Below are positions 3,094 to 62,935 of a stretch of 64,000 nucleotides of DNA, in pieces. The translations under genes and the position numbers were made by a program. The stretch lies in the IMG/VR virus record IMGVR_UViG_3300042868_007959, positions 189,880 to 253,879 of that record; one strand, 5' to 3'. Positions within the stretch are counted from its first letter, which is position 1; every line of letters starts with the position of its first letter. The notes beneath the pieces are model-generated. The model was given only the letters and a program-made list of their open reading frames with translations, had not been told where the DNA came from and ran no database searches.

Positions 3094-3148
3094 AATTTTT
3101 CTATTATATACAATTATTCTAATAAATAAATATTAGATAAAAATAAAA

Positions 3149-3170
3149 AATCCCACCTAAAGATGGGATT
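3149..3170 (-). terminator. intrinsic terminator after tail tube gene
   Basis: AATCCCA/TGGGATT stem with an A-run on the + strand (U-tail on -). Confidence 0.6.
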
Positions 3171-3196
3171 AATTAAAATATATGTCATTCTAAAAA

Positions 3197-3685
3197 TTAG
3201 AATACACTTATTGCTCTATCAAAACGAAGTGTTGCAGTAATATCTGCCAAATCAGAAGATGAATAATCTAATGACCCAAAGTCCACATCGTTTAATTGTG
3301 TCCCTTGTAAAATCCATTTTTGAACCACTACACCTGTTGGGTCTAACATCTCTAACTCTATGTCTTTCTTATAACCTGCAGCATAACCTTGTCTACCTGT
3401 TACAGATTCAGAGTGTAAACGAACCCACTCCATTAACGCCTGAGTCGCAGAAGGACCAATAGGGTCTCTAAAAGTTACAGAGATTGATTCCCAGTTAAAT
3501 CTACCAATTACATATGTAGAAGTATTTAAAAAAGGTATCTCCACCTCTTGACTCGTATATTTTGGTCGGCTAGTTGTAGATACCCACCATTCTTGAATTC
3601 CCAATTCATCTGGAAATCTCAAAATAAACCTATTCTTTCTTAGCGGTTCGTAAGGAACAGGCATTCTCATTAATAAATCAGCCAT
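3197..3685 (-). CDS. gp19: tail tube protein (T4 gp19-like)
   Basis: 162 aa; EPLRKNRFIL, GRFNWESISVTFRD, YKKDIELEMLDPTGVVVQKWILQG, LDYSSSD, TLRFD are typical contractile-tail tube motifs. Confidence 0.9.
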   Translation of the reverse strand: MADLLMRMPVPYEPLRKNRFILRFPDELGIQEWWVSTTSRPKYTSQEVEIPFLNTSTYVIGRFNWESISVTFRDPIGPSATQALMEWVRLHSESVTGRQGYAAGYKKDIELEMLDPTGVVVQKWILQGTQLNDVDFGSLDYSSSDLADITATLRFDRAISVF

Positions 3686-3756
3686 CTTAATTTTTTTTTA
3701 ATTTTTTTTTATTAGTTGTATTATTTATTATATAAATATTGAATTTTTAGAAAAAT

Positions 3757-6753
3757 TTATTTTTCAATAATAATTCTTTTCTTTTTAGGGTTATTTGGGT
3801 CAGATGTATCATACACATTAAAATGTATCTCTGGATATTTCACACTCAATTCTTTCCTTATTAAATTTTCAATAATCTCTATATTACTTAAATCGTCATC
3901 ACTATAACCAACACTAATACCCTCAAAATCAGGGTTATCCTTTATTTCTTCAATTTGTTCTATAACTCTTTCCACAAAACTCCTAAACGCAATTTCTTTT
4001 CCTTTTTCGGGATTTGTACTTGATATATCTAAACCAAAACTATTTAAAAATTCTTTTGAAGATACTGGATGATAATCTTGTAATTTAAGATAATCATTTA
4101 TTGATGTGTCTTTAAGGTTACCCATCATTTTTTCTTTTTCACTATAAGAAAAGTTTTTATCTATTAATACTTTAATACCATCTATTAGTGACTGTGGTGA
4201 ATTTGATCTGGCAGTAATGATAGAGAAGTCATCTCCATTAATTAAAGCCTCTTTAAAATCATTAAAACTAGGTCCGTAACTTCTACTATCTATTGCATAT
4301 TTAACATCTCTAATAAAAGAATCGTACTCTCTAAAATCTTTAAACGCTTCTAATATGTCATTATTAATATATCTAAACTCATCACCTAATTTATGTCTAA
4401 TAGATCTAAATTGTTCGGTAGAAACTGAAACAGGTACCCAATGTAATCCACCAACTTTATATTCTAAATGAATTCTTGTTGGCATTTTTAAAATATTATC
4501 ATCCCAATCGAATGAATATGTTTTTTTGATTGATTCAGTTAAATAACTTTTTTTATATATAATAGATTCATTTTTGGGAGTTTCATTCTCATCATCGGTT
4601 AAACCACTAACAATAAATGGTAATAACGCTGGAAATCCAGCCTCAATCAACTTATAAGCTTGTCTATATAAATCCTTTTCAAGTTTTTTTGCTTGTTCAG
4701 GATAAATTTTTTTCCATTTACGTTCTAATTTACCTAGTACATCAAAAAATTCTCTTGGTATATTATTAACCCAAGCATCAACATCTTTTAACTCATTTCC
4801 TAATTTAACTTGATCAGTAACATTTTTATTTAAAAATTTATCTATAAATGTTTTAAAATAATCTTTTATTTTTTCTACACCTGTTAGATTATTAATATTT
4901 GGTTTTTCTGCACTCAACATAGTTTTATATTTTTGTAAGTCAATATCTACTAATTTCTGAGATTTATTTGTCCCCCTTAAATAATCAACTAGAAAAGTTG
5001 CAAAACCTTTATTTTTTTCTAAAGTACCTAACTCCAACAAAGTTTTAATATTTGCAGTGAATTCCGCCTCAATTTCCTTAACATGACTCCAATAACTTAA
5101 ATCACTTGCAGATTCTTTTACAATCCTCTCAATTTCGGGTGTAGTTATATTATTCTCTATATATTTTAAAAATTGTCTATCATTTAAATTTTCTGTTTTG
5201 TTTTTTATTTTTTTATAATTATCCCCAAACTCAGACCAACTATCAATTGATAATTTTAGAGATCTAATTTTAACATCGTTACCAAATAAATTTATATCAA
5301 ACTTAGTAAGTGGGATTTTCACTGTATCCTTACTTATATATTTTTCAGGTATAATTTTATTTTCTAAAGCCCATTTTTTGAATTCATGTACCCAACTGTA
5401 ATCCTTACTAGTATCTATATTTTTTTCCACCCCAAATTGACTAACCGCCTTTTCAGCAGCGTCATTATCCTCTCTTTGCCATTGGAAAAAATCTGCGTTA
5501 TCTACTTCCTCATTTTTTATGGGTGTCTTTTCTCTTTTACTTTTTAAATAATCCCAAGCCTCTTTCCCATCTACGAATTCGCTTGATTTATAAGTATTAA
5601 AACTATGATTACTTTTTTTTTGTATGACGTGTGTTAATTCATGATAAATCGTATGAAATATAGTATTTTTTAATTCTTCTAAATCTTTAGGATTTCTAGC
5701 TTTTTTTATTTCTTTTGTATTGATTATAACCCATTGACCCCAATTACCATTTATTTCATCTGCATACATTCTTACCCCTAAAGGAACATCGTATCTATAA
5801 ACATACTTTTCTTTTAATTTAGGATCTTTTAATATTTTTTCATTTTTAACCCAGTCCTTTATATACGGTTTTTTATCCCAATCAGCATTTTCAAAAGTCT
5901 TATCATATTCCTCTTTATATAGATCAAATAATTTATCATCATCAATTTTTGCATTATTAAACTGCTCAGGACCTTTATCATTTAAAGAAAATTTTACGTT
6001 ATCACCATTTATCTGTAATGTAACATAAATAGGTTCACCAGTATTTGTATCATACCCCCATTGATCCTCAAAACCATATTTTTTAAACGACGCATCTATA
6101 ATATCCCACTCATCTTTTGGAATATCAGATAATTTTAATCCAGATACTTGTTGTGGTATTTCTTTAGAATCTGTATCTAAATCTATTTTAGTATCGTCTA
6201 TATTTGATAAATTACCTTCATTATCTATAGTATAATTTTTTATCTCACCACCTTCAGTTTTTTGTACTATATTCTTACCACTTTTTTTATCTTTAACTAC
6301 AATAGTTTGTGATTTAGGTTTCGTTGGTGAGTACGTACCTTTACTTTTTTTCCATAAATCAAAAACTATCCCCCTTAAATCTCCTTCAGTTGGTAAATCA
6401 TTTATCACTTGTAAAATTAAATTATCATCTGCAGTTTTTAAGAATCCACTATCTGACCATTTTTTGAAATTAATAACTGCCTTATTTGTGTAATCCCAGT
6501 CAATTCCTGTTGATTTCCATAAAGATTTATAGTCATTTAAATGTTTACCTAGATCATCAAAACTTTTTATTTCAGTATTTAAAAAATTAGTTGCAAGTTT
6601 TGGATCAACATTCTTAATAGCCTTAGCGACTGCGGAAGAACTATCTTCTAAAGCATCCACTAATCTTCTACCAATTCCTTGTTCAGAAATTAAATTATTA
6701 TTTAAAAATTTTTTTAATTTTTTAATTTCCTTTTCTGAAAATAATTTACTCAT
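3757..6753 (-). CDS. large multidomain protein: zincin-like HExxH domain plus C-terminal HAD-like phosphatase
   Basis: 998 aa; HTIYHELTHVIQ...KEIEAE; C-terminal SFDWDDNIL, IITARS, GYSDDDLSN (HAD motifs I, II, IV). Confidence 0.65.
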   Translation of the reverse strand: MSKLFSEKEIKKLKKFLNNNLISEQGIGRRLVDALEDSSSAVAKAIKNVDPKLATNFLNTEIKSFDDLGKHLNDYKSLWKSTGIDWDYTNKAVINFKKWSDSGFLKTADDNLILQVINDLPTEGDLRGIVFDLWKKSKGTYSPTKPKSQTIVVKDKKSGKNIVQKTEGGEIKNYTIDNEGNLSNIDDTKIDLDTDSKEIPQQVSGLKLSDIPKDEWDIIDASFKKYGFEDQWGYDTNTGEPIYVTLQINGDNVKFSLNDKGPEQFNNAKIDDDKLFDLYKEEYDKTFENADWDKKPYIKDWVKNEKILKDPKLKEKYVYRYDVPLGVRMYADEINGNWGQWVIINTKEIKKARNPKDLEELKNTIFHTIYHELTHVIQKKSNHSFNTYKSSEFVDGKEAWDYLKSKREKTPIKNEEVDNADFFQWQREDNDAAEKAVSQFGVEKNIDTSKDYSWVHEFKKWALENKIIPEKYISKDTVKIPLTKFDINLFGNDVKIRSLKLSIDSWSEFGDNYKKIKNKTENLNDRQFLKYIENNITTPEIERIVKESASDLSYWSHVKEIEAEFTANIKTLLELGTLEKNKGFATFLVDYLRGTNKSQKLVDIDLQKYKTMLSAEKPNINNLTGVEKIKDYFKTFIDKFLNKNVTDQVKLGNELKDVDAWVNNIPREFFDVLGKLERKWKKIYPEQAKKLEKDLYRQAYKLIEAGFPALLPFIVSGLTDDENETPKNESIIYKKSYLTESIKKTYSFDWDDNILKMPTRIHLEYKVGGLHWVPVSVSTEQFRSIRHKLGDEFRYINNDILEAFKDFREYDSFIRDVKYAIDSRSYGPSFNDFKEALINGDDFSIITARSNSPQSLIDGIKVLIDKNFSYSEKEKMMGNLKDTSINDYLKLQDYHPVSSKEFLNSFGLDISSTNPEKGKEIAFRSFVERVIEQIEEIKDNPDFEGISVGYSDDDLSNIEIIENLIRKELSVKYPEIHFNVYDTSDPNNPKKKRIIIEK

Positions 6754-6777
6754 ACTAATAAATATTGTGGTTAATTA

Positions 6778-6861: not shown

Positions 6862-6876
6862 TTTAAAATAACTGAT

Positions 6877-8194: not shown

Positions 8195-11044
8195 TTAAAT
8201 GTTATCAAAACTAGCACCTGTGTTAGTGATATTAAATTCTATCGAAATAAATTCTAATGATCTAGTTGGTTTGATAAATATTCTTCCGTTTAATTCGTTT
8301 CTGTCAATAGATTCTGGTGTATCATCTAATGTTACTCTAAAATCAGTTAACCCTCTTTCTTTTCTGATATTATCTAATATTGGATTAACTAAACTTAAGA
8401 ACTGATTTCTTACAACATCATCATTTTGTTCAAACAACAATCTGATAGATACTGCGGATATAAGTTTTCTAGCTTGTAGTAACAATCTTCTAACGTTAAT
8501 TCTGTTAAGAGCACTTTCTCTAACTTGTAATGTTTTATTACCAAAGATAACAACCCCTACATCAGAGAATGTCGCCATAGGATTAATTCTACCTTCATAT
8601 AAATTATCTCTTTCGTCTAATTTAAGTTTAACTCTAGCTTTAATTGCGGTAGTTGTACCTCTATTTAAACCTGCTGCTGCGAACCAAGGGAATGCAACAT
8701 TATCAGTCAATGCGATGTTTCTTACAACTTCTACAGTTGGTGGTAACCAAACATATCTATTATTTTCTGAATCATTCATTTGTAACCAAGGCCAATATGT
8801 AGCGGAATAATTAGAATCTATTCCTGAATCTTCTACAACACTAACTGCCTCTTCCGCTGACAATACAACCCCATCCACATCTACGTCAGGTGTGGTAATT
8901 ATATATAGTGAATCCGCTCTATCAGTTTCAACCATATCAACTGCATTTTCAATTAAACTTGTATTATCTCTCAAATCAATACCAGGTGTTGCAAATACAT
9001 TTATATTTACCGCTTCTGGATTATTAAATGTGTAAATACCATTTAAAAATGCGTAATAATCAGAAGTTATTCCGTCATCACCTTCACTAGTGACAAATGT
9101 ATTAAATATTCCTTTACTTAAACCTAAAATTCCTTTAGTTCCGTTTTTAACGTAATTATCACCATTAGTTCTTTTAGTTCTATATTCGTCCCATCCGTCC
9201 CATCCACCGTAAGGTGCGAAAGTGAATTTTCTAGACGCTATCTTTTCATATGGTCCACCTACTAATGATAAGTCAGTTGTAAATGCTGATATACCAACTT
9301 GTAAAGTAGGTACATAACTTACACTACCTAAATCTATTAAAGAACCAGTTGCGTTCACATCTAAATGGAAACCATCCGTTCTACCTGTATATATACCGTC
9401 ATTAACTGCATTTAATCCCTTATAATCAAAGAAATCTTGATCCACTCCAATATCACTATTTAAACCTAAGTAAGTTTTTCTTAATTTAGATGTATTGAAA
9501 TCTGAGTATTTAGTTTTATATTCTATTTTTGGTGGTAACGCAGTTCTATTAGAACCAACATATGTTCTATTTAACACACCCTCAAATCCTGATGGGAAAT
9601 GGTTACCTAAATCTGGATCGTTTCCGTCCCATAATTCAACCATAACACATTTACTTCTTAATGGAAATTCACCATCAATTGTACCAATTTTTCTTCCTAT
9701 AAATCCAATAGAATTACTATCCATAGATAAAGAAGAATATTTCTCTATTACATTAGGGTTAGCGTCTGTATCGTTAAAACTTCTAATTAACAAATCAAAT
9801 GTTTTATTATCAGGTTGAATGTTTATAATAGAGAACTTAATATCTTGATTTGCAGCATTACCGTCAGATATTGTTACAAACCTAAATAACCTTTGTAATG
9901 TTGACCCTACACCGATACCTTTAACTTCCGAAAGAACCCAAGGAGATAATGCAGTTTTCCAACCCTCTAAATAATTATTAAGGTTATTTGTAATTGTCCC
10001 ACCTATTTCTACAAATGATGTATCTAAACCTCTAACTTTACCTGCACTAATCAAATCTTCCAATACATTAGTATAGATTTCTTCTACCCATAATTCAGTT
10101 TCCTTATCTTGTGTAGATTGACCGAATACTCTAGGTAAGAAATTCTTTTTAGTTCTATCCATAGAAACTTCATAGTTAAAGTTTACCCCATTGAATGTGG
10201 TACCAGTAATATTAAATGAAGCCAATGAGTTTGATGGTAATAATGATGTATTAGTCATTATTGTGTCAGTGGCACCTGTTACATCATATGTTAATGTTTC
10301 TGTCCCATCATAAGATCCTCTCGATCTTAAAGTAGCAATTACACTACCATCTATATCTGTATAACAAGTTGCAGTATAACTAACAACTGTACCACTTGTA
10401 GTTCCTGTTACAAATCCTGTAGAACCACTCCCTTTTGTAAGGACTGTCATATCAAATGTTGCCCCACTGAAATTACAACCATTTTTAACATAATATGGTG
10501 TAGTTACATTAATTGTGTCACCAGTACTTAATAAACCTACTGATGTAAATAACCCATTAATTTGTCCATCCGCATATAATGCAGTTAAATTAGGATCATT
10601 AAATGTAATAGTAACAGGTAATCCCGCAGTAGTTGCAGAATATGTTAATAGTAATGGGTAACTTGTTGTATTTGTAATACCAGTTGTAGTTGGATCCTCT
10701 GAAGAATCTAGTGTGATAGACCACGCATTACCAGCTTTATATCCTGATAAACCTAAAACTCTACTAACATATAATTGATTAGTTTGAGATAGGAACGATT
10801 TTGCGATGTAATTTAATTCATATTTGTTAAAACCATTAGCTTTATATTTTTCGGGGTTTAGTCCACCAAAATAACTAATGAATTCACCGTAATTAGAGAT
10901 GAATACAGGTTCAAAAGCTGGTCCTTTAGGTGTCTCACCTAATAGTCCCAACGTAGTAACCCCAACTTGTCTAGTTACGAATGTTAAGTCTTTTTCAGAT
11001 GTGAACACACCTGGACTCACAAAAATTCTGTCTGTTGATGCCAT
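8195..11044 (-). CDS. gp18: contractile tail sheath protein (T4 gp18-like)
   Basis: 949 aa; SPGVFTSEKD, GETPKGPAFEP, YWPWL, PWFAAAGLNRG, INPMATF, FGNKTLQ, RINVRRLL, FEQND, IKPTRSLEFISIEF. Confidence 0.95.
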   Translation of the reverse strand: MASTDRIFVSPGVFTSEKDLTFVTRQVGVTTLGLLGETPKGPAFEPVFISNYGEFISYFGGLNPEKYKANGFNKYELNYIAKSFLSQTNQLYVSRVLGLSGYKAGNAWSITLDSSEDPTTTGITNTTSYPLLLTYSATTAGLPVTITFNDPNLTALYADGQINGLFTSVGLLSTGDTINVTTPYYVKNGCNFSGATFDMTVLTKGSGSTGFVTGTTSGTVVSYTATCYTDIDGSVIATLRSRGSYDGTETLTYDVTGATDTIMTNTSLLPSNSLASFNITGTTFNGVNFNYEVSMDRTKKNFLPRVFGQSTQDKETELWVEEIYTNVLEDLISAGKVRGLDTSFVEIGGTITNNLNNYLEGWKTALSPWVLSEVKGIGVGSTLQRLFRFVTISDGNAANQDIKFSIINIQPDNKTFDLLIRSFNDTDANPNVIEKYSSLSMDSNSIGFIGRKIGTIDGEFPLRSKCVMVELWDGNDPDLGNHFPSGFEGVLNRTYVGSNRTALPPKIEYKTKYSDFNTSKLRKTYLGLNSDIGVDQDFFDYKGLNAVNDGIYTGRTDGFHLDVNATGSLIDLGSVSYVPTLQVGISAFTTDLSLVGGPYEKIASRKFTFAPYGGWDGWDEYRTKRTNGDNYVKNGTKGILGLSKGIFNTFVTSEGDDGITSDYYAFLNGIYTFNNPEAVNINVFATPGIDLRDNTSLIENAVDMVETDRADSLYIITTPDVDVDGVVLSAEEAVSVVEDSGIDSNYSATYWPWLQMNDSENNRYVWLPPTVEVVRNIALTDNVAFPWFAAAGLNRGTTTAIKARVKLKLDERDNLYEGRINPMATFSDVGVVIFGNKTLQVRESALNRINVRRLLLQARKLISAVSIRLLFEQNDDVVRNQFLSLVNPILDNIRKERGLTDFRVTLDDTPESIDRNELNGRIFIKPTRSLEFISIEFNITNTGASFDNI

Positions 11045-11075
11045 TTAATTTATTTTTTTTACTTATTATTAATTA

Positions 11076-11222
11076 ATTTCTTTAATTATAAATATGCGGT
11101 TTTTTATGAAAAAATATTTTTTGAGTTTGATAAAATAAATTTAGTATGAATTTTATCATACTTTTGTCATACTTATATATAAAAAGGAAATGAAGAGGGA
11201 TAAAAATTTAAAAATCACGCCT
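11076..11222. repeat. direct repeat copy 1 (late motif + operator + 5' end of RHH gene)
   Basis: identical to 13399..13534 except for an 11-bp extra TTTGTCATACT. Confidence 0.9.
11143..11173. promoter_or_regulatory. palindromic operator candidate with extra half-site
   Basis: AGTATGA-ATTTTA-TCATACT-TTTG-TCATACT just upstream of the RHH ORF. Confidence 0.55.
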
Positions 11223-11348
11223 CAAACGCATAAACTTCTAAAGGAATATTGTGAAAATAATGGACTTAAAATGTTTGCGTTTGTGGAGAAATTAATAAAA
11301 GAAAAGTGTAAACCAAAAACAGATTTATATGGTGATGAAATTAATTAA
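11190..11348 (+). CDS. ribbon-helix-helix (Arc/CopG-like) DNA-binding protein, copy 1 (not in ORF track)
   Basis: translated by hand: MKRDKNLKITPQTHKLLKEYCENNGLKMFAFVEKLIKEKCKPKTDLYGDEIN; beta(KNLKI)-helix-G-helix pattern. Confidence 0.7.
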   Translation: MKRDKNLKITPQTHKLLKEYCENNGLKMFAFVEKLIKEKCKPKTDLYGDEIN

Positions 11349-13400: not shown

Positions 13401-13534
13401 TTCTTTAATTATAAATATGCGGTTTTTTATGAAAAAATATTTTTTGAGTTTGATAAAATAAATTTAGTATGAATTTTATCATACTTATATATAAAAAGGA
13501 AATGAAGAGGGATAAAAATTTAAAAATCACGCCT
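13399..13534. repeat. direct repeat copy 2
   Basis: matches 11076..11222; palindrome AGTATGA-N6-TCATACT at 13466..13485. Confidence 0.9.
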
Positions 13535-13651
13535 AACACTCACAAATTACTTAAAGATTATTGTGAGGAAAATGGACTTAAGATGTTCTCTTTTGTTGAG
13601 AAATTAATAAAGGAAAAGTGTATTAAACCTAAAGATATTTATGGTGAATGA
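13502..13651 (+). CDS. ribbon-helix-helix DNA-binding protein, copy 2
   Basis: MKRDKNLKITPNTHKLLKDYCEENGLKMFSFVEKLIKEKCIKPKDIYGE; start set by comparison with copy 1. Confidence 0.7.
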   Translation: MKRDKNLKITPNTHKLLKDYCEENGLKMFSFVEKLIKEKCIKPKDIYGE

Positions 13652-14917: not shown

Positions 14918-14998
14918 ATTTATGACAATTTTTATAAATCCTAATTAAAGGTAATTAAAGCATATGTATGCTATTTTAATAAATATCATAAAAAATAA

Positions 14999-16262: not shown

Positions 16263-16293
16263 TTTTTATTTTTTTTATAAATATTTTATTTTT

Positions 16294-18456: not shown

Positions 18457-18521
18457 AATTATTAAATCTTATTTATAGATAAATATTTATTTTTAAGAAA
18501 AAATTCCCTATAATTATAAAT

Positions 18522-21288: not shown

Positions 21289-21343
21289 ATTTTTTACTAT
21301 ACATTTATCAATTATTAGATATTTATTAATAAATATATCAGTT

Positions 21344-25343: not shown

Positions 25344-25375
25344 CAAATATACTAAATTATTTTTAATATATCAAT
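25344..25375 (-). promoter_or_regulatory. Bacteroidota-type promoter for polB
   Basis: ATTG-N20-TATATTTG on the - strand. Confidence 0.5.
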
Positions 25376-32557: not shown

Positions 32558-32616
32558 AACTTTATTTTTAAATAAATATTTAGAATTGTGTTATATTTAT
32601 ATAAAAAAGATTTATT

Positions 32617-35938: not shown

Positions 35939-35980
35939 TTTTTTATCATTTTTTTATATTTATAGGAAAACTAATTTTTT

Positions 35981-51842: not shown

Positions 51843-52577
51843 ATGTTAGAAGAACCTAAGAAAAGAGGTAGAAAGAGAACAAACAATTTATATTTTGGTC
51901 CTGAACAGGAAGAAGCAGTAGTTAAATTTTTAACATGTGAGTCATATAACGAAAGAAATAAAATTTATAATGAATATCTAAAAGCCCCAATAGATAAGAT
52001 GGTAGAATCCATCATAAGACGATATAAATTATATAGGAAAGAGTATGAGTATGAAGATGTTCATTCAGACACTCTTTCTTTTTTAATAACTAAAATGCAC
52101 AATTTTAAACCAGATAAGAATAAAAAAGCTTATTCCTATTTTGGTACGATATGTAAACATTATCTTTTAGGTCAACTTATAAAAGACGATAAGAAGTTAA
52201 AATCTGATGTATCCTATGAAGATGTATATCGGACTGTAGAAACTATGGAAGAATTTACTTATACCATAGATGATGACAAAATACAATTAGATACTTTTAT
52301 AGATGAAATTTCTGCAAGTATTAAAGGTGAAATGAAATATAATAAATTATCTGAAATAGAACTTAAAGTTGGTTTAGCATTGACTACTATTTTAGATAAC
52401 TGGGAAACTATATTTGAACAAATTGAAAGTGGTAACAAATATAACAAAAATTTAATTTTATCTTATATAAGAGAAATATCTGATCTATCTACTAAAGATA
52501 TAAGAGTAGGTATGAGAAGATTTAAGAAGATTTATGGTTTATTGAAAAACGATAAATTAGAAGACGATTCTTTGTAA
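51843..52577 (+). CDS. phage late sigma factor (T4 gp55-like)
   Basis: sigma region-2-like NFKPDKNKKAYSYFGTICKHYL; N-terminal YF..EQEEA. Confidence 0.7.
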   Translation: MLEEPKKRGRKRTNNLYFGPEQEEAVVKFLTCESYNERNKIYNEYLKAPIDKMVESIIRRYKLYRKEYEYEDVHSDTLSFLITKMHNFKPDKNKKAYSYFGTICKHYLLGQLIKDDKKLKSDVSYEDVYRTVETMEEFTYTIDDDKIQLDTFIDEISASIKGEMKYNKLSEIELKVGLALTTILDNWETIFEQIESGNKYNKNLILSYIREISDLSTKDIRVGMRRFKKIYGLLKNDKLEDDSL

Positions 52578-52591: not shown

Positions 52592-52599
52592 ATATTTAT
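52592..52599 (+). promoter_or_regulatory. candidate phage late promoter ATATTTAT (representative copy)
   Basis: same motif in sense orientation upstream of about 19 structural or late genes (see findings). Confidence 0.65.
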
Positions 52600-52614: not shown

Positions 52615-52998
52615 ATGAGTAGACCTAAAAAAACTAAAATCAATTTAGATAAAAATAGTTTACAGGAATTAATGCAAGAAATTTATAATGATTGTAGTAA
52701 TATAATGAATAGTGCTAGAAGAGAAATAAATGAAAGAAAAGTTAGAGTTAATATAGAAGACGTTAATGACGAATACCAAATTGGTAAAGTTAATAATGAA
52801 ACTCTTAAAATTTTAGAAACCACTATTGATAAAAAAATAGCTTTAGCAAAATTACAATCTCAGATACTTGGTAATAAAAGTAATGAAGATGATGGCAATA
52901 ATGTAGGTAATGGTATTACAGAAGAAGATAAAAATATTCTAAGAGAATTATTTAAAGAAAAGGCTGGTAATAAAAATACTAAATACGATATAGATTAA
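52615..52998 (+). CDS. hypothetical late protein
   Basis: 127-aa helical ORF; ATATTTATA upstream. Confidence 0.6.
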   Translation: MSRPKKTKINLDKNSLQELMQEIYNDCSNIMNSARREINERKVRVNIEDVNDEYQIGKVNNETLKILETTIDKKIALAKLQSQILGNKSNEDDGNNVGNGITEEDKNILRELFKEKAGNKNTKYDID

Positions 52999-56658: not shown

Positions 56659-56679
56659 GATATTTATTTATAAAAAGAA

Positions 56680-58086
56680 ATGGTATACAGAACTTATATA
56701 GATAAAAATAATACAATTATTTTTGGGACAAGTATTAACACAGGAAGAAATCCCATCGTAGAGTTGTATTATGGTGGTAAAGAAACACAAACTGATTACA
56801 CAAGACATTTATTATATTTTGATGTTTCCGATTTACAGGAAAAATATAATAATGGTGAATTAGGTGATTTATCTGAAGTAACTCACATATTAAGAATGAC
56901 AAATAGTTCATTTTTTGATAAAGATTTGCAGGCACAAAAATTATTAGATGGTAAACAAAGAACATCTTCTTTTGATTTAGTACTATTTAAAATAAATCAA
57001 TTTTGGGATGAGGGTTGTGGTTATGACTATAGAGAAACAAAATATGAAAATTATAATAGTGATATTACCTTTGTTGAATCCGCAAGTAATTGGTTAAATG
57101 CAACAACAGTAAATAGTTGGTTACAACCAGGTGTATATTCAGGATCACCCACATCAATTACAATTAATACACAACATTTTGATAAGGGAAATGAGAACAT
57201 CGAAATGGACATCACTAATGAAGTTAATAAACTTATAACTGGTGGTAGTATAAATTATGGGTATGGGTTATCATTTGAAAGACCATTAGAGTTAAAAGAA
57301 ATTGTACCCTCACAGTATGTAGGATTTTTTAGTAGACACACTCAAACTTATTATGAACCATTTTTAGAAACTATATGTGATAATACTATTAGAGATGATA
57401 GAAAAAATTTCTATAGGGGTAAATTAAATAGATTATATTTTTACACTAATTTAGGTAGTGAACCTACAAATTTAGATACTAAACCTACTGTAACCGTTAA
57501 TGATAGTAATGGTACTATTATATCCGCATATACTAGTAGTGATGTTAAACAATCAGATAAGGGGGTTTATTATATTGAACTATTCGTACCTATATCAAAC
57601 ACCCAATGTGGATTATTTACCGATGTATGGTCAGATATAGTAATAGATGGTAATATACGTCCAGATGTTACATTAGAATTTGAGGTAAAAGACGATACTG
57701 AATATTATAACTTCGGAGATAGCGAATCTCTACCTATAGAATATATGGTTAATTTAAGTGGTATTATGAGGGATGAAAAAATAAAAAGAGGAGATAAAAG
57801 AAAAGTATTTGTCAATGCTAGATTACCCTATACAGTTAATGAAAGTAGTGTAATCGATGGTTTACAATATAGATTGTGGGTTAAAGAAGGTAATGCAGAA
57901 GTTAATGTAATAGATTGGTCAGATGTTAATAGAGCCTATTTAAGGAATTATTTTATTTTAGATACTTCTTGGATGATACCTAATGAATATTTTATCGATA
58001 TTAAATTAAAATCTAATCAATTGGTAAAAACCTATACTAATACTCTCAAATTTAACATTATCAATCAAGTAGATTATTCACATTAA
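56680..58086 (+). CDS. virion protein with DNRLRE-like N-terminal domain
   Basis: RHLLYFDVS..., WDEG.G, SNW...W..PG; ATATTTAT upstream. Confidence 0.45.
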   Translation: MVYRTYIDKNNTIIFGTSINTGRNPIVELYYGGKETQTDYTRHLLYFDVSDLQEKYNNGELGDLSEVTHILRMTNSSFFDKDLQAQKLLDGKQRTSSFDLVLFKINQFWDEGCGYDYRETKYENYNSDITFVESASNWLNATTVNSWLQPGVYSGSPTSITINTQHFDKGNENIEMDITNEVNKLITGGSINYGYGLSFERPLELKEIVPSQYVGFFSRHTQTYYEPFLETICDNTIRDDRKNFYRGKLNRLYFYTNLGSEPTNLDTKPTVTVNDSNGTIISAYTSSDVKQSDKGVYYIELFVPISNTQCGLFTDVWSDIVIDGNIRPDVTLEFEVKDDTEYYNFGDSESLPIEYMVNLSGIMRDEKIKRGDKRKVFVNARLPYTVNESSVIDGLQYRLWVKEGNAEVNVIDWSDVNRAYLRNYFILDTSWMIPNEYFIDIKLKSNQLVKTYTNTLKFNIINQVDYSH

Positions 58087-58919
58087 TCAGTAATATTGAT
58101 AGGTTCAATTCCTTCTGGTAATTTAAAATTAGTTTCGGACAGTTTATTTAAAACATCTTTTATAGTTAAATCAAATGTCTTAAATATATTTTCCTTTGTC
58201 ATAGGTGTAGGATATGGGACATTAAATGACATTAAATCTATTTTATCTCTGTCATTAATTTCTCCCAATACGTTAGAATATGTACTAATAACCTTAAATT
58301 CATTTTGATTTATATTTTGATATCCATTCCTATCAAATTCCCAAGGTAACCGTTCTATCTTATTACCATCCCCATCAATAGAGTAAAAATCTATTGACAC
58401 TGATAATGTTCTACTACTAATTGCGTCCATAGTAAGATAATGTCTTCTATAAGTCCCATCTATTTGATAATTTGGTAAGGATATGTACATATAAAAACCT
58501 CTAAATCCGCTACTAAGACTAACTACCCTACCTTCAATCGATTCTGCTCCCACATCTCCATCAAAATGTAAATTAACTTCGTAATTATTTTCATTTAATT
58601 TAGAAAATTCACTTGATAAAGAAGATAAATTTTCGTGAAATAATCTATAAATTGGTTCTTTTTTACGTATCGATTGATGTGGTGCAAATAATTCTCTAGC
58701 TGACCATGAAAATGTTTTGGTTAACGAATAAGCACTTTCATAATCTAAATTAAAATCCTCTATCAATTCTGCCGCAACATCCCACTGGTTAAAGTTGGTA
58801 TTACTATCCCCGTATTTTTTATACAACATCTCTAAAATTCTTTTTTCTTGTGGACTGAATTCAGATGACACATCAATTAACCTAGATTCTAAAATTACGT
58901 ATTTCTTTTTTATTCTCAT
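58083..58919 (-). CDS. hypothetical protein (VILES leader)
   Basis: 278-aa ORF downstream of the capsid gene. Confidence 0.6.
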   Translation of the reverse strand: MRIKKKYVILESRLIDVSSEFSPQEKRILEMLYKKYGDSNTNFNQWDVAAELIEDFNLDYESAYSLTKTFSWSARELFAPHQSIRKKEPIYRLFHENLSSLSSEFSKLNENNYEVNLHFDGDVGAESIEGRVVSLSSGFRGFYMYISLPNYQIDGTYRRHYLTMDAISSRTLSVSIDFYSIDGDGNKIERLPWEFDRNGYQNINQNEFKVISTYSNVLGEINDRDKIDLMSFNVPYPTPMTKENIFKTFDLTIKDVLNKLSETNFKLPEGIEPINITD

Positions 58920-58956
58920 AATTACAAATATACTAATAAATATTTTAAAAAATAAA

Positions 58957-59004: not shown

Positions 59005-60762
59005 TTATCTTAATTCGTTAAGATCAAAAGTTTGAACTCCATCAACAGTTACAGTTCCGTAGAATCTGTTGTTCACCATTTTCTTAGCGTATCTCGTCAT
59101 GATACCTTTAGTTGGTGCAAAGTTAAACGGATTTTGTAATGTAGGTGTCAATTGTAGAGGTACATACGGTGCGTAAATGTATCCTGTATCTAACAATGAT
59201 TTACCTTTGTGTCCAATAATGATTGAGTTAGCTGGTGCATAAGGGTCTCTAAATACAGTATATCTACCACCTAATGAACCGATTTTCTCAATACCCATAT
59301 TGTATTGGTCTTGCTCTGGAGAAGCGTTTGATACGTGGAAGTATTCTAAATCGTCAAAAATTGCTGATACCTCAGAAGATACAACGATAAAGTTAGCTCC
59401 ACCTCTCAAAGTAGACTTATGAATTTGAGCAGATACTTGATTTACTTTTGTAATCAATGTCTGATTCCACTCTTTTTGAGTGTATGCGTTGAAACCACCA
59501 CCGTTGTTAGCTCTCTTCCAACCGTTGTAATCCCATCTCAATTGCCATGCTGCTCCTTTTCTTAAATCTCTTAAGATCTCTCTATCAATCTCAGCAGCTA
59601 CCTGCTCAGACAATAAAGCCGTAAGTTCAGCTTCAGCATCGATGTTATGGAATGCACTAACGTCTTGTGCTAATTCAGGTGACCAAGTAGCTCTTAGTTT
59701 TCTTTCTGTAACCGATACAACTACTTCATCCAATTCAAAAGATACTTCACCCATTTCTGTAGCGAATTCTAATGTTGCATATTGTGCCCAAGATACAGAT
59801 AAATTTCCCCACTGTTCTGCCGTTGTAGCTGAAGTAGCACCTACATAACCATCGAAGTTTGAAGATGTACAATTGATACAAGCTGGGTGAGTTAAATCTA
59901 ATTCGATTAATAAACATCCGTCAGGTTGACAAATATTAGTATAATCAACAATACCTCTACCATATTTTTGAGATACTAATCTGAATGGTACTACACCACC
60001 TGCAGCGATAATAGTTTTACCATCTTTATCTAAGATAGCGTCATCACTAGTTACTGTTAAAGAAGCTAAGAAAGACTCAGTATCCATTTCGTTTCCGTCT
60101 GGTCCTGTCAATCTACCTGCATTTGTAGAAGAGAAACCAGTAATACAAGCTTTAACTGTTCTAACTGAACCGTCAGCTGCTAATGGTTGATCTTCAAAAG
60201 GTGTTTCAACTTTCTCACCACTAGCGTTTAAAACAACTGGATTTAATCCACCATTATAAACTGTTCTAGTACCTTTAGATGCGTCATACAATCCGTCATT
60301 GTAGAATAAATCATAAAGATTTTTCTTTCTATACTCTGTTGTCATACCAGACGCACCATTACAATCTACAATTACACACTGAGGTAAAGAACCGTTAGTA
60401 GAGTTACCATTTAAATCAAATGCTCCGTTAGATGTTTTTGGTACAAAGAAGAATAATTTTCCGATTGGCATGTTCATCGCTTGTACTGATACGATATCGT
60501 TAGCCAATAATTTAGAGAATACTCTTCTCACAATAGGGAAAACTACTGTTTCGAATGATCCAGAAGAATCAGCCGATGTTGATTCGTTCAATAGAGCAGA
60601 CGCTTGGTTTTCATATAACTGTGCGATGTTCTCTTTGATGTGACCTTTTAAACCTTCTAAGAATCCTAATGAATTCCATTTAGAAATGGTTTTAGATCTA
60701 ATTTGTTTTAGGTGTTCTAGTCCGATATTACCGACTTCACCTGAATTTAATAAATGTCCCAT
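59005..60762 (-). CDS. gp23: major capsid protein (T4 gp23-like)
   Basis: KW...LEG, LYENQ, PIVRRVF, VSVQAMNMP.G, RKLRATWSPELAQD, EIDREI, YAPYVPL, TRYA. Confidence 0.96.
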   Translation of the reverse strand: MGHLLNSGEVGNIGLEHLKQIRSKTISKWNSLGFLEGLKGHIKENIAQLYENQASALLNESTSADSSGSFETVVFPIVRRVFSKLLANDIVSVQAMNMPIGKLFFFVPKTSNGAFDLNGNSTNGSLPQCVIVDCNGASGMTTEYRKKNLYDLFYNDGLYDASKGTRTVYNGGLNPVVLNASGEKVETPFEDQPLAADGSVRTVKACITGFSSTNAGRLTGPDGNEMDTESFLASLTVTSDDAILDKDGKTIIAAGGVVPFRLVSQKYGRGIVDYTNICQPDGCLLIELDLTHPACINCTSSNFDGYVGATSATTAEQWGNLSVSWAQYATLEFATEMGEVSFELDEVVVSVTERKLRATWSPELAQDVSAFHNIDAEAELTALLSEQVAAEIDREILRDLRKGAAWQLRWDYNGWKRANNGGGFNAYTQKEWNQTLITKVNQVSAQIHKSTLRGGANFIVVSSEVSAIFDDLEYFHVSNASPEQDQYNMGIEKIGSLGGRYTVFRDPYAPANSIIIGHKGKSLLDTGYIYAPYVPLQLTPTLQNPFNFAPTKGIMTRYAKKMVNNRFYGTVTVDGVQTFDLNELR

Positions 60763-60794
60763 TTTTTTATTTTATTTATTTTATTTGTTATTTT

Positions 60795-62102
60795 TTATGA
60801 GATTCTTCTCATTAAATCTTTAATTGCCGTAATCTGTGGATCAACATAAGCAGTTGACTCATTTAAATTAGTAGCAGTATAAGATTTTACTGTTTTGTTA
60901 ACTTTATTTTCAACAGACTCATTCATTGGTTTTTTATTATCCATTTCAGACTTTATAGTTCTATAGATATTTTTAGATTCTTTAATCGTTTCCGCATTAT
61001 CAAATCTTTTTAATATATCCATTTTTTCTTTTTTAGTTGTAGAATGTTCAGTGAACAATCTGTTAACATAAGCCAAATTGGTATTAAATAACGCAACCTC
61101 ATTAAGTTTGTCTTTAAAAATATTAAGAGCTTTTTTATATTCTTCGTTTTTACTTTTTAGCTCTTCGTATTCTTTCATTATTTTGGATTCGGAAACTGTG
61201 TTAACAATTGGTTTTCTATTGACTAAAGGTTTACGAACAGTTTTAGATTCTCTAGCCGCAAATCTAGCACCGTTGTATCTTTGTTTACCACTTGTTCTAT
61301 TATGTCTTTGCAACTTATCTTCTGAAATCTCTTCCTCGTCAATATATGCCCCTTCACCCATTGCATCATAGTCTTCATCAGTATGAAAATTTTCACCTTC
61401 ATCACCTGCTAACATCTCATACATTGGAGAATCTTCTTCTAAGTGAATTTCATAGATAGTTTCATCACCACCTTCTTCATCTTCATACATAGAACCTGAT
61501 CCACATTCAGAACAATATTCCTTTTCTTTCAAACCAAATCTATCTTCCATAGATTCCTTAATGTAATACTCTACACCAGTTTCATTATCTTTTAAATGAA
61601 TTCCACCTGCATCCTTAACTACTTCTACTTCATCATCGTCACCCAATTTGTTTTTAAACACATGAATAACTTCTTCGTCAGAAGCACCTGTTAAGTCTAA
61701 CACTTCCTCTTCGTCATCACCCATATCCATCATATCGAAATTAAGTTCTGATTCATCATCTTCTTCTTCACCAGCGTCTAAATCTAGATCAACATCTAAA
61801 TCTAAATCAACAGGTTCTTCAGAGTCTTCTTCTTCAGAGTCTAATTTTAATTCTGTTTCGGGTTCTTCGACACCTTCTTCATTGTCAAGATCTAACTCAA
61901 CTTCATCATCTTTGGATCCTTCTAAATCAATATCGTCCACTTCTTCTTCATCTTGTTCTTTTAAAGATGACTCAACGATACTCTCAATTTCTCTCGACAA
62001 GTGTGCCGAAAGCATTTCTTTCGTGTTGGCTTTTAAGGCATCCTCAATAGACTTAGCTTCTAGCAAAGCCTCTTCGATGATATTTTTCTTTTTTTCAGCC
62101 AT
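60795..62102 (-). CDS. prohead core scaffold protein (gp22-like)
   Basis: very acidic; between protease and capsid genes; LNEVALFNTNLAYVNRLF; many [ILMV]xE sites. Confidence 0.75.
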   Translation of the reverse strand: MAEKKKNIIEEALLEAKSIEDALKANTKEMLSAHLSREIESIVESSLKEQDEEEVDDIDLEGSKDDEVELDLDNEEGVEEPETELKLDSEEEDSEEPVDLDLDVDLDLDAGEEEDDESELNFDMMDMGDDEEEVLDLTGASDEEVIHVFKNKLGDDDEVEVVKDAGGIHLKDNETGVEYYIKESMEDRFGLKEKEYCSECGSGSMYEDEEGGDETIYEIHLEEDSPMYEMLAGDEGENFHTDEDYDAMGEGAYIDEEEISEDKLQRHNRTSGKQRYNGARFAARESKTVRKPLVNRKPIVNTVSESKIMKEYEELKSKNEEYKKALNIFKDKLNEVALFNTNLAYVNRLFTEHSTTKKEKMDILKRFDNAETIKESKNIYRTIKSEMDNKKPMNESVENKVNKTVKSYTATNLNESTAYVDPQITAIKDLMRRIS

Positions 62103-62161
62103 TTTGTTTTTTTTAAAATTTTATTATTTAAATTATTGTAAACGCAATTTTGCATTCTATT

Positions 62162-62169
62162 ATAAATAT
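62162..62169 (-). promoter_or_regulatory. candidate late promoter ATATTTAT for scaffold-capsid operon
   Basis: ATAAATAT on + is ATATTTAT on -, upstream of 62102. Confidence 0.6.
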
Positions 62170-62199
62170 ACTATTTTTCGAAAAAGTTTATTTTTTTTT

Positions 62200-62889
62200 T
62201 TAATCAAGTAAGAAATTTGTTAAACTATCTTTAAGATTGTCCACATTTTTTTTATTTTTTGATTCCGACATTTGTTGTTCTTTAGATGGTTCTTCACTAT
62301 AAATCCAAGACCCTGGAGTTGATGGTGACGTAACCACATCCCAACAGATTAATTCATAATCATCTTGAACTACGTTTCTACCATTTTCTTTTTCTAATGA
62401 TCCAACACCTCTAGATGATACACCAATCTTTAATCCTTTTCTTATATAGTTGGCTACTCTGTCACCCTCACAAGATATGATACCTTGATTAACAAATCCT
62501 GGTGACATTATAATTTCTAACTTACCCATCAGTACATTACCTTCCCACCATAAATCGATTACATTATGTGAAATTCTACTTACGGCAACAATAGATGATT
62601 CAGGATGATCCGCCTCACCTAATGCTCTTTTTTCTTTAATTAGTTTTAGATAGTTTTCTGCCTCTCTTCTTAGTATGGCTTCGGGATATACTCTTTCATT
62701 TTTGTTTTCTACTCCATATTTTTGTAATACGGCATAAACAACTAAGGGCTCCTCTATAATGGGTTGCCCTTGAGTTAGTTTATTTACTTCGTTAACGAAA
62801 TTTCTATTATCTTTAGGTGAAATGTAACCTGCGTCATATTCGACAAGAATACCTTTCTTTTTTACTTCATTTTTTTTTAAAATCTCCAT
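62200..62889 (-). CDS. gp21: prohead core protease (T4 gp21-like)
   Basis: NKNERVYP, ALGEADHP, SH, GVSSRGVGS, WDVVTSPS. Confidence 0.93.
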   Translation of the reverse strand: MEILKKNEVKKKGILVEYDAGYISPKDNRNFVNEVNKLTQGQPIIEEPLVVYAVLQKYGVENKNERVYPEAILRREAENYLKLIKEKRALGEADHPESSIVAVSRISHNVIDLWWEGNVLMGKLEIIMSPGFVNQGIISCEGDRVANYIRKGLKIGVSSRGVGSLEKENGRNVVQDDYELICWDVVTSPSTPGSWIYSEEPSKEQQMSESKNKKNVDNLKDSLTNFLLD

Positions 62890-62935
62890 AATAGTGATAT
62901 AGTTTTATTATAAATATATCACTATACTAAAAAAA

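What the first reader, a model, noticed from the sequence alone, without database searches (positions are those of the whole stretch)
3125..62918. Strand-specific late promoter ATATTTAT, the reverse complement of T4's TATAAATA, paired with a gp55-like sigma
Seen: ATATTTAT in gene-sense orientation about 5-60 nt upstream of starts. Minus-strand genes: near 3126, 3732, 6758, 11088, 13411, 14979, 16277, 18479, 21329, 25745, 32572, 58936, 62162, 62910. Plus-strand genes: near 21319, 32593, 35956, 52592, 56660. Divergent late pairs carry one copy in each orientation (21319..21336; 32572..32600). It is absent before polB, the GT cluster start and the morons. Inference: this is the element recognised by 51843..52577. 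Caveat: the genome is very AT-rich and the octamer also occurs inside genes.
Basis: partly seen in the sequence, partly recalled or inferred. Interest (0 to 1): 0.6.

Follow-up and report, generated by a model that had tools for sequence, protein, structure and literature searches.

The report
Late-promoter octamer of far-T4 phages
A sharply defined, gene-oriented DNA word (ATATTTAT, core TATTTAT) sits just upstream of the head and tail genes of this freshwater T4-like phage and its relatives. It is most likely the late promoter read by the phage's own divergent gp55-type sigma factor, making it a new sequence variant of a known system.

Summary
All 19 listed sites exist. Across the 253.9-kb genome, ATATTTAT is the commonest sense-strand octamer between same-strand genes (43 sense, 5 antisense). 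Upstream regions hold 62 copies against 8.5 ± 2.9 in dinucleotide shuffles.

- **Sharpness:** no one-mismatch variant is enriched except ATATTTGT, which belongs to a second class, the canonical Bacteroidota host promoter.
- **Position:** the octamer lies at the same distances from start codons as the host -7 box and often directly follows terminators.
- **Genes:** it precedes the tail tube, sheath, fibre, head protease and scaffold–capsid genes. polB, primase and SSB carry the host-type promoter.
- **Conservation:** it is gene-specific in 50 related contigs. The core also marks structural genes in Flavobacterium phage immuto and Microcystis phage Mel-JY01.
- **Sigma link:** those two phages share only the gp55-like sigma with this genome, which also encodes two canonical sigmas outside the window.

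The 244-aa protein has a sigma region-2 fold and weak but colinear similarity to gp55. No transcription start data exist, so both promoter function and the sigma assignment are inferred. Verdict: a new variant of a known kind. The 'reverse complement of T4' framing is true of the letters but probably not meaningful.

The parts
51843..52577 (+). 244-aa divergent gp55-type sigma factor, the candidate reader of the motif. It has no ATATTTAT upstream of itself.
   Evidence: phrog_234 'late sigma' E 3.7e-5; Pfam Sigma70_r2 20.9 bits, below the cut-off. AF2 model: residues 19-124 match sigma region-2 domains, and the top six VIA hits are all sigmas (SigB Z 8.1, rmsd 2.7 Å over 85 residues). hhalign to the gp55 family: E 1.3e-3, 106 colinear columns. 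Orthologues lack the motif upstream in 0 of 48 cases.
52592..52599 (+). ATATTTAT 15 nt before gene 52615-52998, directly after the sigma stop codon.
   Evidence: Conserved upstream of 35/41 orthologues exactly and 41/41 as TATTTAT, while the flanking intergenic sequence diverges. The same arrangement occurs after immuto gp118.
56660..56667 (+). ATATTTAT 12 nt before gene 56680-58086.
   Evidence: 34/40 orthologues exact, 40/40 TATTTAT.
58936..58943 (-). ATATTTAT 16 nt before gene 58083-58919, placed 13 nt after a terminator hairpin and T-run.
   Evidence: Present in 29/30 orthologues, whereas the overlapping host-like TATATTTG is not conserved.
62162..62169 (-). ATATTTAT 59 nt before gene 60795-62102, which is followed by the Gp23-type major capsid gene 59005-60762 that has no motif of its own.
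   Evidence: Present in 21/21 orthologues; 0/36 capsid-gene orthologues have their own copy.
62140..62157 (-). Stem-loop in the leader, starting 5 nt after the octamer.
   Evidence: All 14 distinct orthologous leaders fold into a hairpin starting mostly 5-10 nt after the octamer, built from different stem sequences (z -1.7 to -6.1 against shuffles). This fits a 5' end lying between octamer and hairpin.
62910..62917 (-). ATATTTAT 20 nt before the head maturation protease gene 62200-62889.
   Evidence: phrog_207 E 1.7e-39.
3732..3739 (-). ATATTTAT 46 nt before the tail tube gene 3197-3685.
   Evidence: phrog_4542 E 3e-26.
11088..11095 (-). ATATTTAT 43 nt before the tail sheath gene 8195-11044.
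   Evidence: phrog_23 E 9e-61. Lies inside a duplicated ~290-nt cassette.
13411..13418 (-). ATATTTAT 10 nt before gene 11697-13400, in the second copy of the duplicated cassette.
14979..14986 (-). ATATTTAT 61 nt before the fibre-like gene 13658-14917, after a terminator.
32572..32600 (.). Divergent pair: a minus-strand copy (32572-32579) before the 1714-aa appendage/fibre gene, and a plus-strand copy (32593-32600) before gene 32617-33456.
21319..21336 (.). Divergent pair: a plus-strand copy before gene 21344-22486 (adaptor-like) and a minus-strand copy before gene 20917-21288.
18479..18490 (.). Overlapping divergent pair: a minus-strand copy before gene 17944-18456 and a plus-strand copy 31 nt before the helicase gene 18522-20315.
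6758..6765 (-). ATATTTAT only 4 nt before the ATG of gene 3757-6753, after a terminator. Candidate leaderless transcript.
   Evidence: The 4-5 nt distance class is shared with host-type boxes. The host spacing from box to transcription start is 4-5 nt (PMC6847099).
25745..25752 (-). ATATTTAT 5 nt before the ATG of gene 25371-25739.
3126..3133 (-). ATATTTAT 32 nt before gene 2053-3093, after a terminator.
16277..16284 (-). ATATTTAT 14 nt before gene 15045-16262.
35956..35963 (+). ATATTTAT 17 nt before gene 35981-37774.
25344..25351 (-). Contrast class: host-type box TATATTTG 28 nt before polB 22448-25315.
   Evidence: This class has TTTG 19-20 nt upstream, matching the Bacteroidota sigma-A consensus (PMC6847099).

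Best explanation
ATATTTAT (conserved core TATTTAT) is the -10-like core of this phage's late promoters.

The phage is a distant T4-like myovirus, probably of a freshwater Bacteroidota host. It appears to use two promoter classes.
- Early and middle genes (polB, primase, SSB, SbcD-like nuclease, NAMPT, RNA ligase) carry the host sigma-A promoter, TTTG-N19-20-TATATTTGT.
- Late transcription units carry the octamer and no -33 box. These include the tail tube, sheath, fibres, head protease and the scaffold-to-major-capsid operon.

The likely anatomy of a late promoter is:
1. a statistical T-tract 12-16 nt upstream of the octamer;
2. the octamer itself;
3. four G/C-free bases;
4. an A-rich position where initiation probably occurs, about 5-7 nt after the octamer.

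Genes whose ATG lies 4-5 nt downstream would then be leaderless.

The element is most likely read by host core RNA polymerase carrying the phage's 244-aa gp55-type sigma (51843-52577). That gene sits in a motif-free, non-late gene cluster. Its region-2-like domain would bind the melted non-template strand, as T4 gp55 does.

What is shown: the enrichment, strand bias, sharpness, position, gene association, gene-specific conservation, and co-occurrence with the sigma gene across phages. What is inferred: promoter activity, late timing, the start site, and which factor reads the element.
For: **Statistics.** z = 18.6 genome-wide and z = 12 in the window against dinucleotide shuffles. It is the top sense octamer at 43 to 5. 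No mismatch variant is tolerated.

**Position.**
- The distance-to-ATG profile (peaks at 4-5 and 12-20 nt) matches that of the 37 host-type TAnnTTTG boxes.
- Sites only 3-5 nt from the ATG leave no room for another promoter element downstream.
- G/C is nearly absent for six bases after the octamer, followed by A at about 70%. T4 late promoters show the same AT-rich feature downstream of the box (PMC2988020).
- 10 of 65 sites follow a perfect-stem terminator.
- Divergent gene pairs carry one copy in each orientation.

**Gene class.** All PHROG-identified structural genes or operons in the window are preceded by the octamer. Ten host-type-promoter genes sampled outside the window are mostly DNA or nucleotide metabolism genes, and none is a virion component.

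**Footprint.** Orthologues of motif-bearing genes keep it in 35/41, 34/40, 29/30 and 21/21 cases, and the 7-mer core in 41/41 and 40/40. Orthologues of motif-less genes lack it in 0/43, 0/33, 1/45, 0/50, 0/48, 0/25 and 0/36 cases.

**Leader hairpin.** A hairpin is conserved by structure, not sequence, just downstream of the octamer in the capsid operon leader.

**Other phages.**
- Immuto (Flavobacterium host): TATTTAT 36 sense to 12 antisense, before the terminase, portal, sheath, tube and baseplate hub genes.
- Mel-JY01 (Microcystis host): in 11 of 20 intergenic regions of the structural module, although its genes use GGAG ribosome sites.

**Sigma link.**
- Immuto and Mel-JY01 have the gp55-like homologue but no Sigma70_r2 match in their complete records.
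- Local tblastn on the first 150 kb of immuto finds no homologue of this genome's other two sigmas.
- The sigma fold and gp55 colinearity are supported.
- Of the gp55 pocket residues, L54, R57, F86 and Y97 align to I57, R60, F88 and Y99. H95, which contacts A-9, aligns to Tyr, and T99 to Gly. This fits a change in the centre of the box.
Against: - There are no transcript 5' ends. The public metatranscriptome contigs cover only the capsid gene and its upstream neighbours, and cannot show starts, strand or timing.
- Homology to gp55 is weak: hhalign probability 19%, and the PDB profile search gives E 3.6 for gp55.
- The best structural Z of 8.1 is at the level the tool warns can be common for helical folds.
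- The genome has two bona fide sigma genes that could in principle read the motif.
- No gp45 clamp, gp44 loader or beta-clamp was found. A T4-style clamp-activated mechanism is therefore unsupported, although the record is only 78% complete.
- The octamer also precedes two helicase genes and many genes of unknown function. 'Late' is thus an extrapolation from the structural genes.
- The T-tract is statistical and is not conserved at orthologous sites.
Confidence: 0.62

Rival explanations
1. The octamer is a late promoter, but it is read by one of the phage's two canonical sigma factors: the RpoD/sigma-A-like 265-aa protein (genome 125314-126111) or the ECF-like 175-aa protein (genome 40494-41021). 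A sigma-A paralogue retuned from TTTG to TTTA would explain the close resemblance to the host -7 box.
For: Both genes match Sigma70_r2 strongly, at E about 1e-19. ATATTTAT and the host-type TATATTTGT share ATATTT and differ mainly by G to A. The complete jumbo relatives G001 and G002 also carry all three sigma types.
Against: Immuto and Mel-JY01 use the same TATTTAT core but have no Sigma70_r2 match in their complete genomes. Local tblastn on the first 150 kb of immuto finds no homologue of either protein. Late sites lack the -33 TTTG that a region-4-bearing sigma would be expected to use.
Confidence: 0.12
2. The octamer is a promoter element used by host sigma-A holoenzyme after modification by phage proteins. 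This would be an activator or sigma-appropriation mechanism like T4 MotA/AsiA or Mu C, with the 244-aa protein doing something else.
For: The octamer occupies the same position as the host -7 box and resembles it. No direct link to the sigma has been shown.
Against: The invariant G of the Bacteroidota -7 box is replaced, and no -33 box is present. The same core is kept in a cyanobacterial phage whose host sigma recognises different elements. The octamer is invariant to a degree typical of a sigma-read -10 element.
Confidence: 0.1
3. The octamer acts in the RNA, not as a promoter. It would be a 5'-UTR element for translation, processing or stability, on transcripts that start further upstream.
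For: It lies in gene sense close to start codons. Bacteroidota lack Shine-Dalgarno sites and use A/U-rich leaders (PMC6847099).
Against: Its distance to the ATG ranges from 3 to 89 nt. It often sits directly after terminators, where no upstream transcript would continue. In Mel-JY01 it lies 20-90 nt upstream of genes that have their own GGAG sites. Many genes inside operons lack it.
Confidence: 0.05
4. It is a compositional artefact of a 29% G+C genome.
For: The whole-window count is only modestly above shuffles, 38 against 26.5. The octamer also occurs inside genes.
Against: z = 12-18.6 in composition-matched upstream regions, 43 to 5 strand bias, equal orientations inside genes, and gene-specific conservation across diverged relatives.
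Confidence: 0.01

Closest known systems
T4 late promoters (TATAAATA at -13 to -6) read by gp55, with gp33 and the gp45 sliding clamp
   Same: A single, tightly conserved, AT-only 8-bp -10-like box with no -35 element and an AT-rich stretch downstream. It is used in either orientation before virion genes, in a phage with a Gp23-type capsid, and is paired with a small sigma that has only a region-2-like DNA-reading domain.
   Different: The box sequence differs. TATAAATA is not enriched in sense here (7 sense, 28 antisense). In the same orientation, TATTTATA differs at the two central positions. The sigma is 244 aa rather than 185 aa, with an extra C-terminal helical domain and a different C-terminal tail. 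No gp33, gp45 or gp44 was detected.
Variant late consensus sequences of other T4-related phages (KVP40, 44RR, cyanophage S-PM2; Aeh1 with a/gC at -13/-12)
   Same: An in-silico late consensus that tracks the gp55 lineage (PMC2988020).
   Different: Those variants keep the AAATA core. This clade has TTTAT, a change in the part of the box that gp55 flips into its pockets.
Bacteroidota sigma-A promoter (-33 TTTG / -7 TAnnTTTG)
   Same: Same position relative to start codons. It shares ATATTT with this phage's own host-type boxes, and an AT-rich or T-rich tract lies about two helical turns upstream.
   Different: The invariant G is replaced by A, the leading T is not required, and there is no -33 TTTG.
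Other phage-encoded late sigmas, such as SPO1 gp34 (own knowledge, not tested here)
   Same: A phage-encoded sigma redirects host core polymerase to late promoters with their own consensus.
   Different: Those sigmas recognise bipartite -35/-10 promoters. Here only one box is evident.

Membership tests
T4 gp55-type late sigma | Sigma region-2-like domain that binds the core polymerase and the -10-like element | tested here: met
   AF2 model residues 19-124: the six best VIA matches are all sigma region-2 domains (SigB Z 8.1, SigI 7.4, pro-sigma-K 7.3, AlgU 6.7, CnrH 6.5, ShbA 6.4). Pfam Sigma70_r2 scores 20.9 bits, just under the cut-off.
T4 gp55-type late sigma | Sequence membership in the gp55 family | tested here: inconclusive
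   phrog_234 E 3.7e-5 and 1.6e-6. hhalign to T4 gp55 alone gives E 0.0094, and to a 22-sequence gp55 profile E 0.0013 at probability 18.7%, 106 colinear columns. The PDB profile search gives gp55 7d7c_F only E 3.6.
T4 gp55-type late sigma | No region 4 and no -35 recognition | tested here: met
   The C-terminal domain model (pLDDT 80) matches only generic helical hairpins and no sigma-4 fold. No conserved -35/-33 element lies upstream of the octamer, only a statistical T-tract.
T4 gp55-type late sigma | Hydrophobic C-terminal clamp-binding tail (SLDFLYE-type) | tested here: inconclusive
   A conserved acidic-Gly-hydrophobic tail sits at or near the C-terminus (endings such as ...DNDLL...ENGFL...DKGLL; immuto ...DAGFSIQ). 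It is not the T4 motif, and no binding was tested.
T4 gp55-type late sigma | Partners gp33 co-activator and gp45 sliding clamp encoded by the phage | tested here: inconclusive
   The T4 gp45 and gp44 proteins and Pfam PF02916, PF09116 and PF00712 find nothing in the genome. The record is 78% complete, several of these searches had no positive control, and gp33 itself was not searched.
T4-type late promoter | Consensus TATAAATA in gene sense | tested here: not met
   TATAAATA occurs 7 times sense and 28 antisense between same-strand genes. The antisense excess is the complement of TATTTATA.
T4-type late promoter | A single, tightly conserved -10-like box with no upstream element, before late (virion) genes | tested here: met
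T4-type late promoter | Late transcripts start a few bases downstream, dependent on the sigma | not testable with these tools
   Only assembled metatranscriptome contigs were available. They give no 5' ends or timing.
Bacteroidota sigma-A promoter | -7 box TAnnTTTG with invariant G, plus -33 TTTG | tested here: not met
   The octamer has A where the G should be and no TTTG upstream. A separate class of 37 sites in the same genome does meet the definition (PMC6847099).

The most novel reading that the evidence does not exclude
A whole clade of far-T4 phages, spanning Bacteroidota hosts and at least one cyanobacterial host, may run late transcription with a self-contained gp55-type sigma. In this reading, its added C-terminal domain replaces the gp33/gp45 clamp-coupled activation of T4. 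Its box, TATTTAT, is a re-tuned TATAAATA with the central AA changed to TT. In Bacteroidota phages that box lies one base (G to A) away from the host -7 box, so a single position would separate early from late promoters.
Probability: 0.25. Interest if true: 0.7.

Novelty: new variant of a known kind. Interest (0 to 1): 0.55.

Why it matters
**A natural specificity variant of gp55.** gp55 is a minimal sigma that reads its promoter with a region-2-like domain alone. Here the central bases that T4 gp55 flips into pockets are changed, and two of the aligned pocket residues are changed with them. This gives a testable pairing for how minimal sigmas read single-stranded -10 DNA.

**Annotation.** The motif offers a simple marker for annotating late transcription units in the many uncultured T4-like phages of freshwater and marine Bacteroidota. 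Fifty related contigs were found in one scan.

**A tractable system.** The cultured phage immuto and its host Flavobacterium sp. LMO8 share the motif, so the prediction can be tested directly.

**Host prediction.** The contrast between host-type and late boxes in one genome supports assigning the host phylum from promoter sequences.

Tried and rejected
- **Whole-window count against shuffles.** Too blunt, because it mixes coding and non-coding sequence. Replaced by oriented upstream-region tests.
- **Public RNA runs.** Fourteen freshwater metatranscriptomes hold parts of the stretch, but only as short assembled contigs over the capsid gene and its upstream neighbours. They give no starts, strand or timing.
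- **Foldseek against PDB for the sigma.** No hit at E ≤ 0.001, although sigma factors dominate the top rows. VIA-align was used instead.
- **Consensus fold of the capsid-operon leader.** No pairs were predicted, because MAFFT misaligned hairpins with different loop lengths. Folding each leader separately resolved it.
- **Clamp and loader searches.** All empty. Treated as uninformative rather than as absence.
- **T7-like RNA polymerase family search.** Empty, with no control ringing, so uninformative.
- **Literature searches.** Searches for the motif, immuto, Mel-JY01, and phage promoters of the Bacteroidota type found no description of this element.
- **The T-tract as a leftover of terminator T-runs.** Rejected, because it persists in the 55 sites without a terminator.
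- **The 127-aa gene downstream of the sigma as a gp33 analogue.** Considered but not pursued. It carries a late motif itself and has no family match. No complex prediction was run, because no binding claim is made.

Full report
**What the window is.** The window is the last 64 kb of a single 253,879-bp IMG/VR virus record, 29% G+C and estimated 78% complete. It encodes:
- a Gp23-type major capsid protein at 59005-60762;
- a head protease, tail sheath, tail tube and fibre-like proteins;
- a family-B DNA polymerase.

The closest isolates by capsid and sigma similarity are Flavobacterium phage vB_FspM_immuto, Microcystis phage Mel-JY01 and an uncultured 484-kb phage. Freshwater and lake metatranscriptomes contain near-identical or related capsid-region contigs.

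- Of 121 genome-wide copies, 74 lie in the 7.5% of the genome that is non-coding. Of those, 65 point at a start codon within 100 nt.
- Between same-strand genes, ATATTTAT is the most frequent sense octamer, 43 against 5 for its complement, with Markov expectations of 5-13.
- Dinucleotide-preserving shuffles of the oriented upstream regions give 8.5 ± 2.9 against 62 observed genome-wide, and 2.0 ± 1.4 against 19 in the window.
- Inside genes the two orientations are equal, and density is about 30-fold lower.
- The word is sharp. None of 24 single-mismatch variants is enriched except ATATTTGT and, weakly, ATATTTAA.

**A second promoter class gives the frame of reference.** ATATTTGT/TATATTTG (22 to 1 and 21 to 2 sense to antisense) belongs to 37 sites of the form TTTG, a 19-20 nt spacer, then TAtaTTTGt. 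This is the published Bacteroidota sigma-A promoter. Its -7 box spans T-12 to G-5 and lies 4-5 nt from the transcription start (PMC6847099). The host is therefore very probably a member of the Bacteroidota. Genes behind these sites include polB in the window. Ten sampled outside the window include NAMPT, RNA ligase, primase, SSB, an SbcD-like nuclease, an HNH endonuclease and phosphoesterases.

**Anatomy of the ATATTTAT sites.**
- An alignment of the 65 sites shows no conservation immediately upstream of the octamer.
- There is a T-tract 12-16 nt upstream. It persists in the 55 sites that do not follow a terminator.
- G and C are almost absent for six bases downstream. A then reaches about 70% from the fifth base after the octamer.
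- Distances from octamer to ATG peak at 4-5 nt and 12-20 nt, the same profile as the host-type boxes.

Because some sites lie only 3-5 nt from the ATG, the octamer must be the most downstream promoter element. With the host spacing, those genes would be leaderless. This last point is an inference.

Ten sites follow perfect-stem terminators at a fixed offset. Three divergent gene pairs in the window carry one copy in each direction.

**Gene association.** In the window the octamer precedes:
- the tail tube, sheath and a fibre-like gene;
- the 1714-aa appendage gene and an adaptor-like gene;
- the head protease;
- the gene that heads the operon ending in the major capsid gene.

It is absent from the 12-kb plus-strand cluster of glycosyltransferase, dUTPase and related genes, which also contains the sigma gene. 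It is not exclusive to virion genes. An SNF2-type helicase in the window and a DnaB-like helicase elsewhere also have it. T4 likewise has late promoters before some non-structural genes (own knowledge).

**Conservation.** One scan of IMG/VR with the sigma protein returned 50 loci with homologues at 45-99% identity. Orthologues of the four motif-bearing genes within reach keep the octamer in 35/41, 34/40, 29/30 and 21/21 cases, and the 7-mer TATTTAT in 41/41 and 40/40. Orthologues of motif-less genes lack it: 0/43, 0/33, 1/45, 0/50, 0/48, 0/25 and 0/36. In the most distant loci the surrounding intergenic sequence is unrelated and only the core survives, with position 1 varying A > G > C.

The leader of the capsid operon adds a further constraint. 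All 14 distinct versions form a stem-loop, starting 5-10 nt after the octamer in ten of them, built from different sequences. This fits a 5' end between octamer and hairpin.

**Beyond the close relatives.**
- In cultured Flavobacterium phage immuto (34% G+C), TATTTAT is 36 sense to 12 antisense between genes, with ATATTTAT at 18 to 1 and CTATTTAT at 14 to 2. It precedes the terminase, portal, sheath, tube, baseplate hub and tail spike genes, and sits just after the sigma homologue gp118.
- Immuto's early region instead uses a different, very regular promoter: GTTG, about 20 nt, then TATATTTAGGTA.
- In Microcystis phage Mel-JY01, aTATTTATa occurs in 11 of 20 intergenic regions of the structural module, even though its genes carry GGAG ribosome sites typical of a different host.

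The late box is therefore constant while the early promoters and translation signals change with the host. It tracks a phage factor, not the host sigma.

**Which factor?** The 244-aa product of 51843-52577 matches phrog_234 (late sigma) at E 3.7e-5, and Sigma70_r2 just below threshold.
- An AlphaFold model built on 24 homologues (pLDDT 70.7) has an N-terminal domain whose six best structural matches are all sigma region-2 domains. The best is Z 8.1 at 2.7 Å over 85 residues. The tool warns that such Z values are not decisive for helical folds.
- Profile-profile comparison with a 22-member T4 gp55 family alignment gives E 0.0013 and probability 19% over 106 colinear columns.
- In that alignment, gp55 pocket residues L54, R57, F86 and Y97 correspond to I57, R60, F88 and Y99, which are conserved here. 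Y97 is the residue that stacks on A-12. H95, which contacts A-9, corresponds to an invariant Tyr, and T99 to an invariant Gly.
- Read in the same orientation as T4's box, TATTTATA keeps A-12 and A-8 and changes -10 and -9. The changed residues are therefore at least consistent with the changed bases. This is an inference from a weak alignment.
- The C-terminal 105 residues fold confidently (pLDDT 80) into helical hairpins with no sigma-4 match.
- The extreme C-terminus is a conserved acidic-Gly-hydrophobic tail. It differs from gp55's clamp-binding motif.

The genome also encodes an RpoD-like 265-aa sigma and an ECF-like 175-aa sigma, both outside the window. The complete jumbo relatives G001 and G002 carry all three types as well. 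The complete genomes of immuto and Mel-JY01 have no Sigma70_r2 match, and local tblastn on the first 150 kb of immuto finds no homologue of these two proteins. Both phages nevertheless have the gp55-like gene and the TATTTAT box. The gp55-like protein is thus the only sigma-type gene common to all motif-bearing phages examined.

**What is not established.** There are no transcript 5' ends, no timing data and no binding data. No gp45, gp44 or beta-clamp homologue was detected, and gp33 was not searched. Whether activation is clamp-coupled as in T4 is therefore unknown. The register of the box relative to +1 is also open. The host-like spacing of 4-5 nt fits the leaderless class and the A-rich position. 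T4's spacing would not fit that class.

**Comparison and novelty.** The system works like T4 late transcription: one invariant AT-only -10-like box, no -35 element, and a minimal phage sigma. It fails the T4 consensus test, since TATAAATA is not enriched in sense. Membership of the sigma in the gp55 family is only weakly supported. Known variants in T4-related phages keep the AAATA core (PMC2988020).

Six searches of the open-access paper library found no description of this box. The library does not cover most subscription journals. I therefore rate it a new variant of a known kind.

The 'reverse complement of T4' description is nearly correct as a statement about the letters, since TATTTATA is the exact complement. 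The orientation evidence, however, says the element functions in gene sense. The same-orientation comparison (two central substitutions) and the comparison with the host -7 box (G to A) are more informative.

Noticed in passing
Genome outside the window: G000:C1:125314-126111 (-) and 40494-41021 (-); loci L054, L055: Two further sigma genes: an RpoD/sigma-A-like 265-aa protein with regions 2 and 4, and an ECF-like 175-aa protein behind a host-type promoter. Their targets are unknown, and a third (middle) promoter class may exist.
   Followed up: partly
Window 6854, 11159, 25344, 40086 and genome-wide (37 sites): Canonical Bacteroidota sigma-A promoters (TTTG-N19-20-TATATTTGT) before polB, primase, SSB, NAMPT and other genes. 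They predict a Bacteroidota host for this uncultured phage.
   Followed up: yes
Window 11059-11335 and 13382-13647: A direct repeat of about 290 nt (81-93% identity). It duplicates a cassette holding a late octamer for the minus-strand gene, a divergent host-type promoter and a small plus-strand ORF (52 and 60 aa).
   Followed up: partly
Window 62140-62157 (-), and orthologous leaders in L002-L032: A stem-loop conserved in structure but not in sequence, at the start of the leader of the scaffold-to-capsid operon. It may be an mRNA-stabilising 5' hairpin.
   Followed up: partly
Window 6758, 25745; genome 13 sites: Octamers or host-type boxes only 4-5 nt from the ATG imply leaderless mRNAs in both promoter classes.
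   Followed up: partly
L057 (immuto 60-77 kb): Immuto's early region has about 20 nearly identical promoters of the form GTTG-N~20-TATATTTAGGTA(T/C)... before small genes. Their -7 box ends in TTTAG rather than the canonical TTTG.
   Followed up: partly
Window 52615-52998 (+): A conserved 127-aa gene with a basic N-terminus always follows the sigma gene (41 loci), and immuto has a 116-aa gene in the same position. It has no family match, and its function is unknown.
   Followed up: partly
Window 28001-30000: A G+C island (43% against about 29%) inside the 1714-aa appendage gene. It coincides with nine repeats of a phrog_25468 domain.
   Followed up: no
Window 59005-62533: Contigs from several freshwater and lake metatranscriptomes match the capsid gene and its upstream genes at 90-99% identity. 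This phage group is therefore present, and probably active, in lakes.
   Followed up: partly
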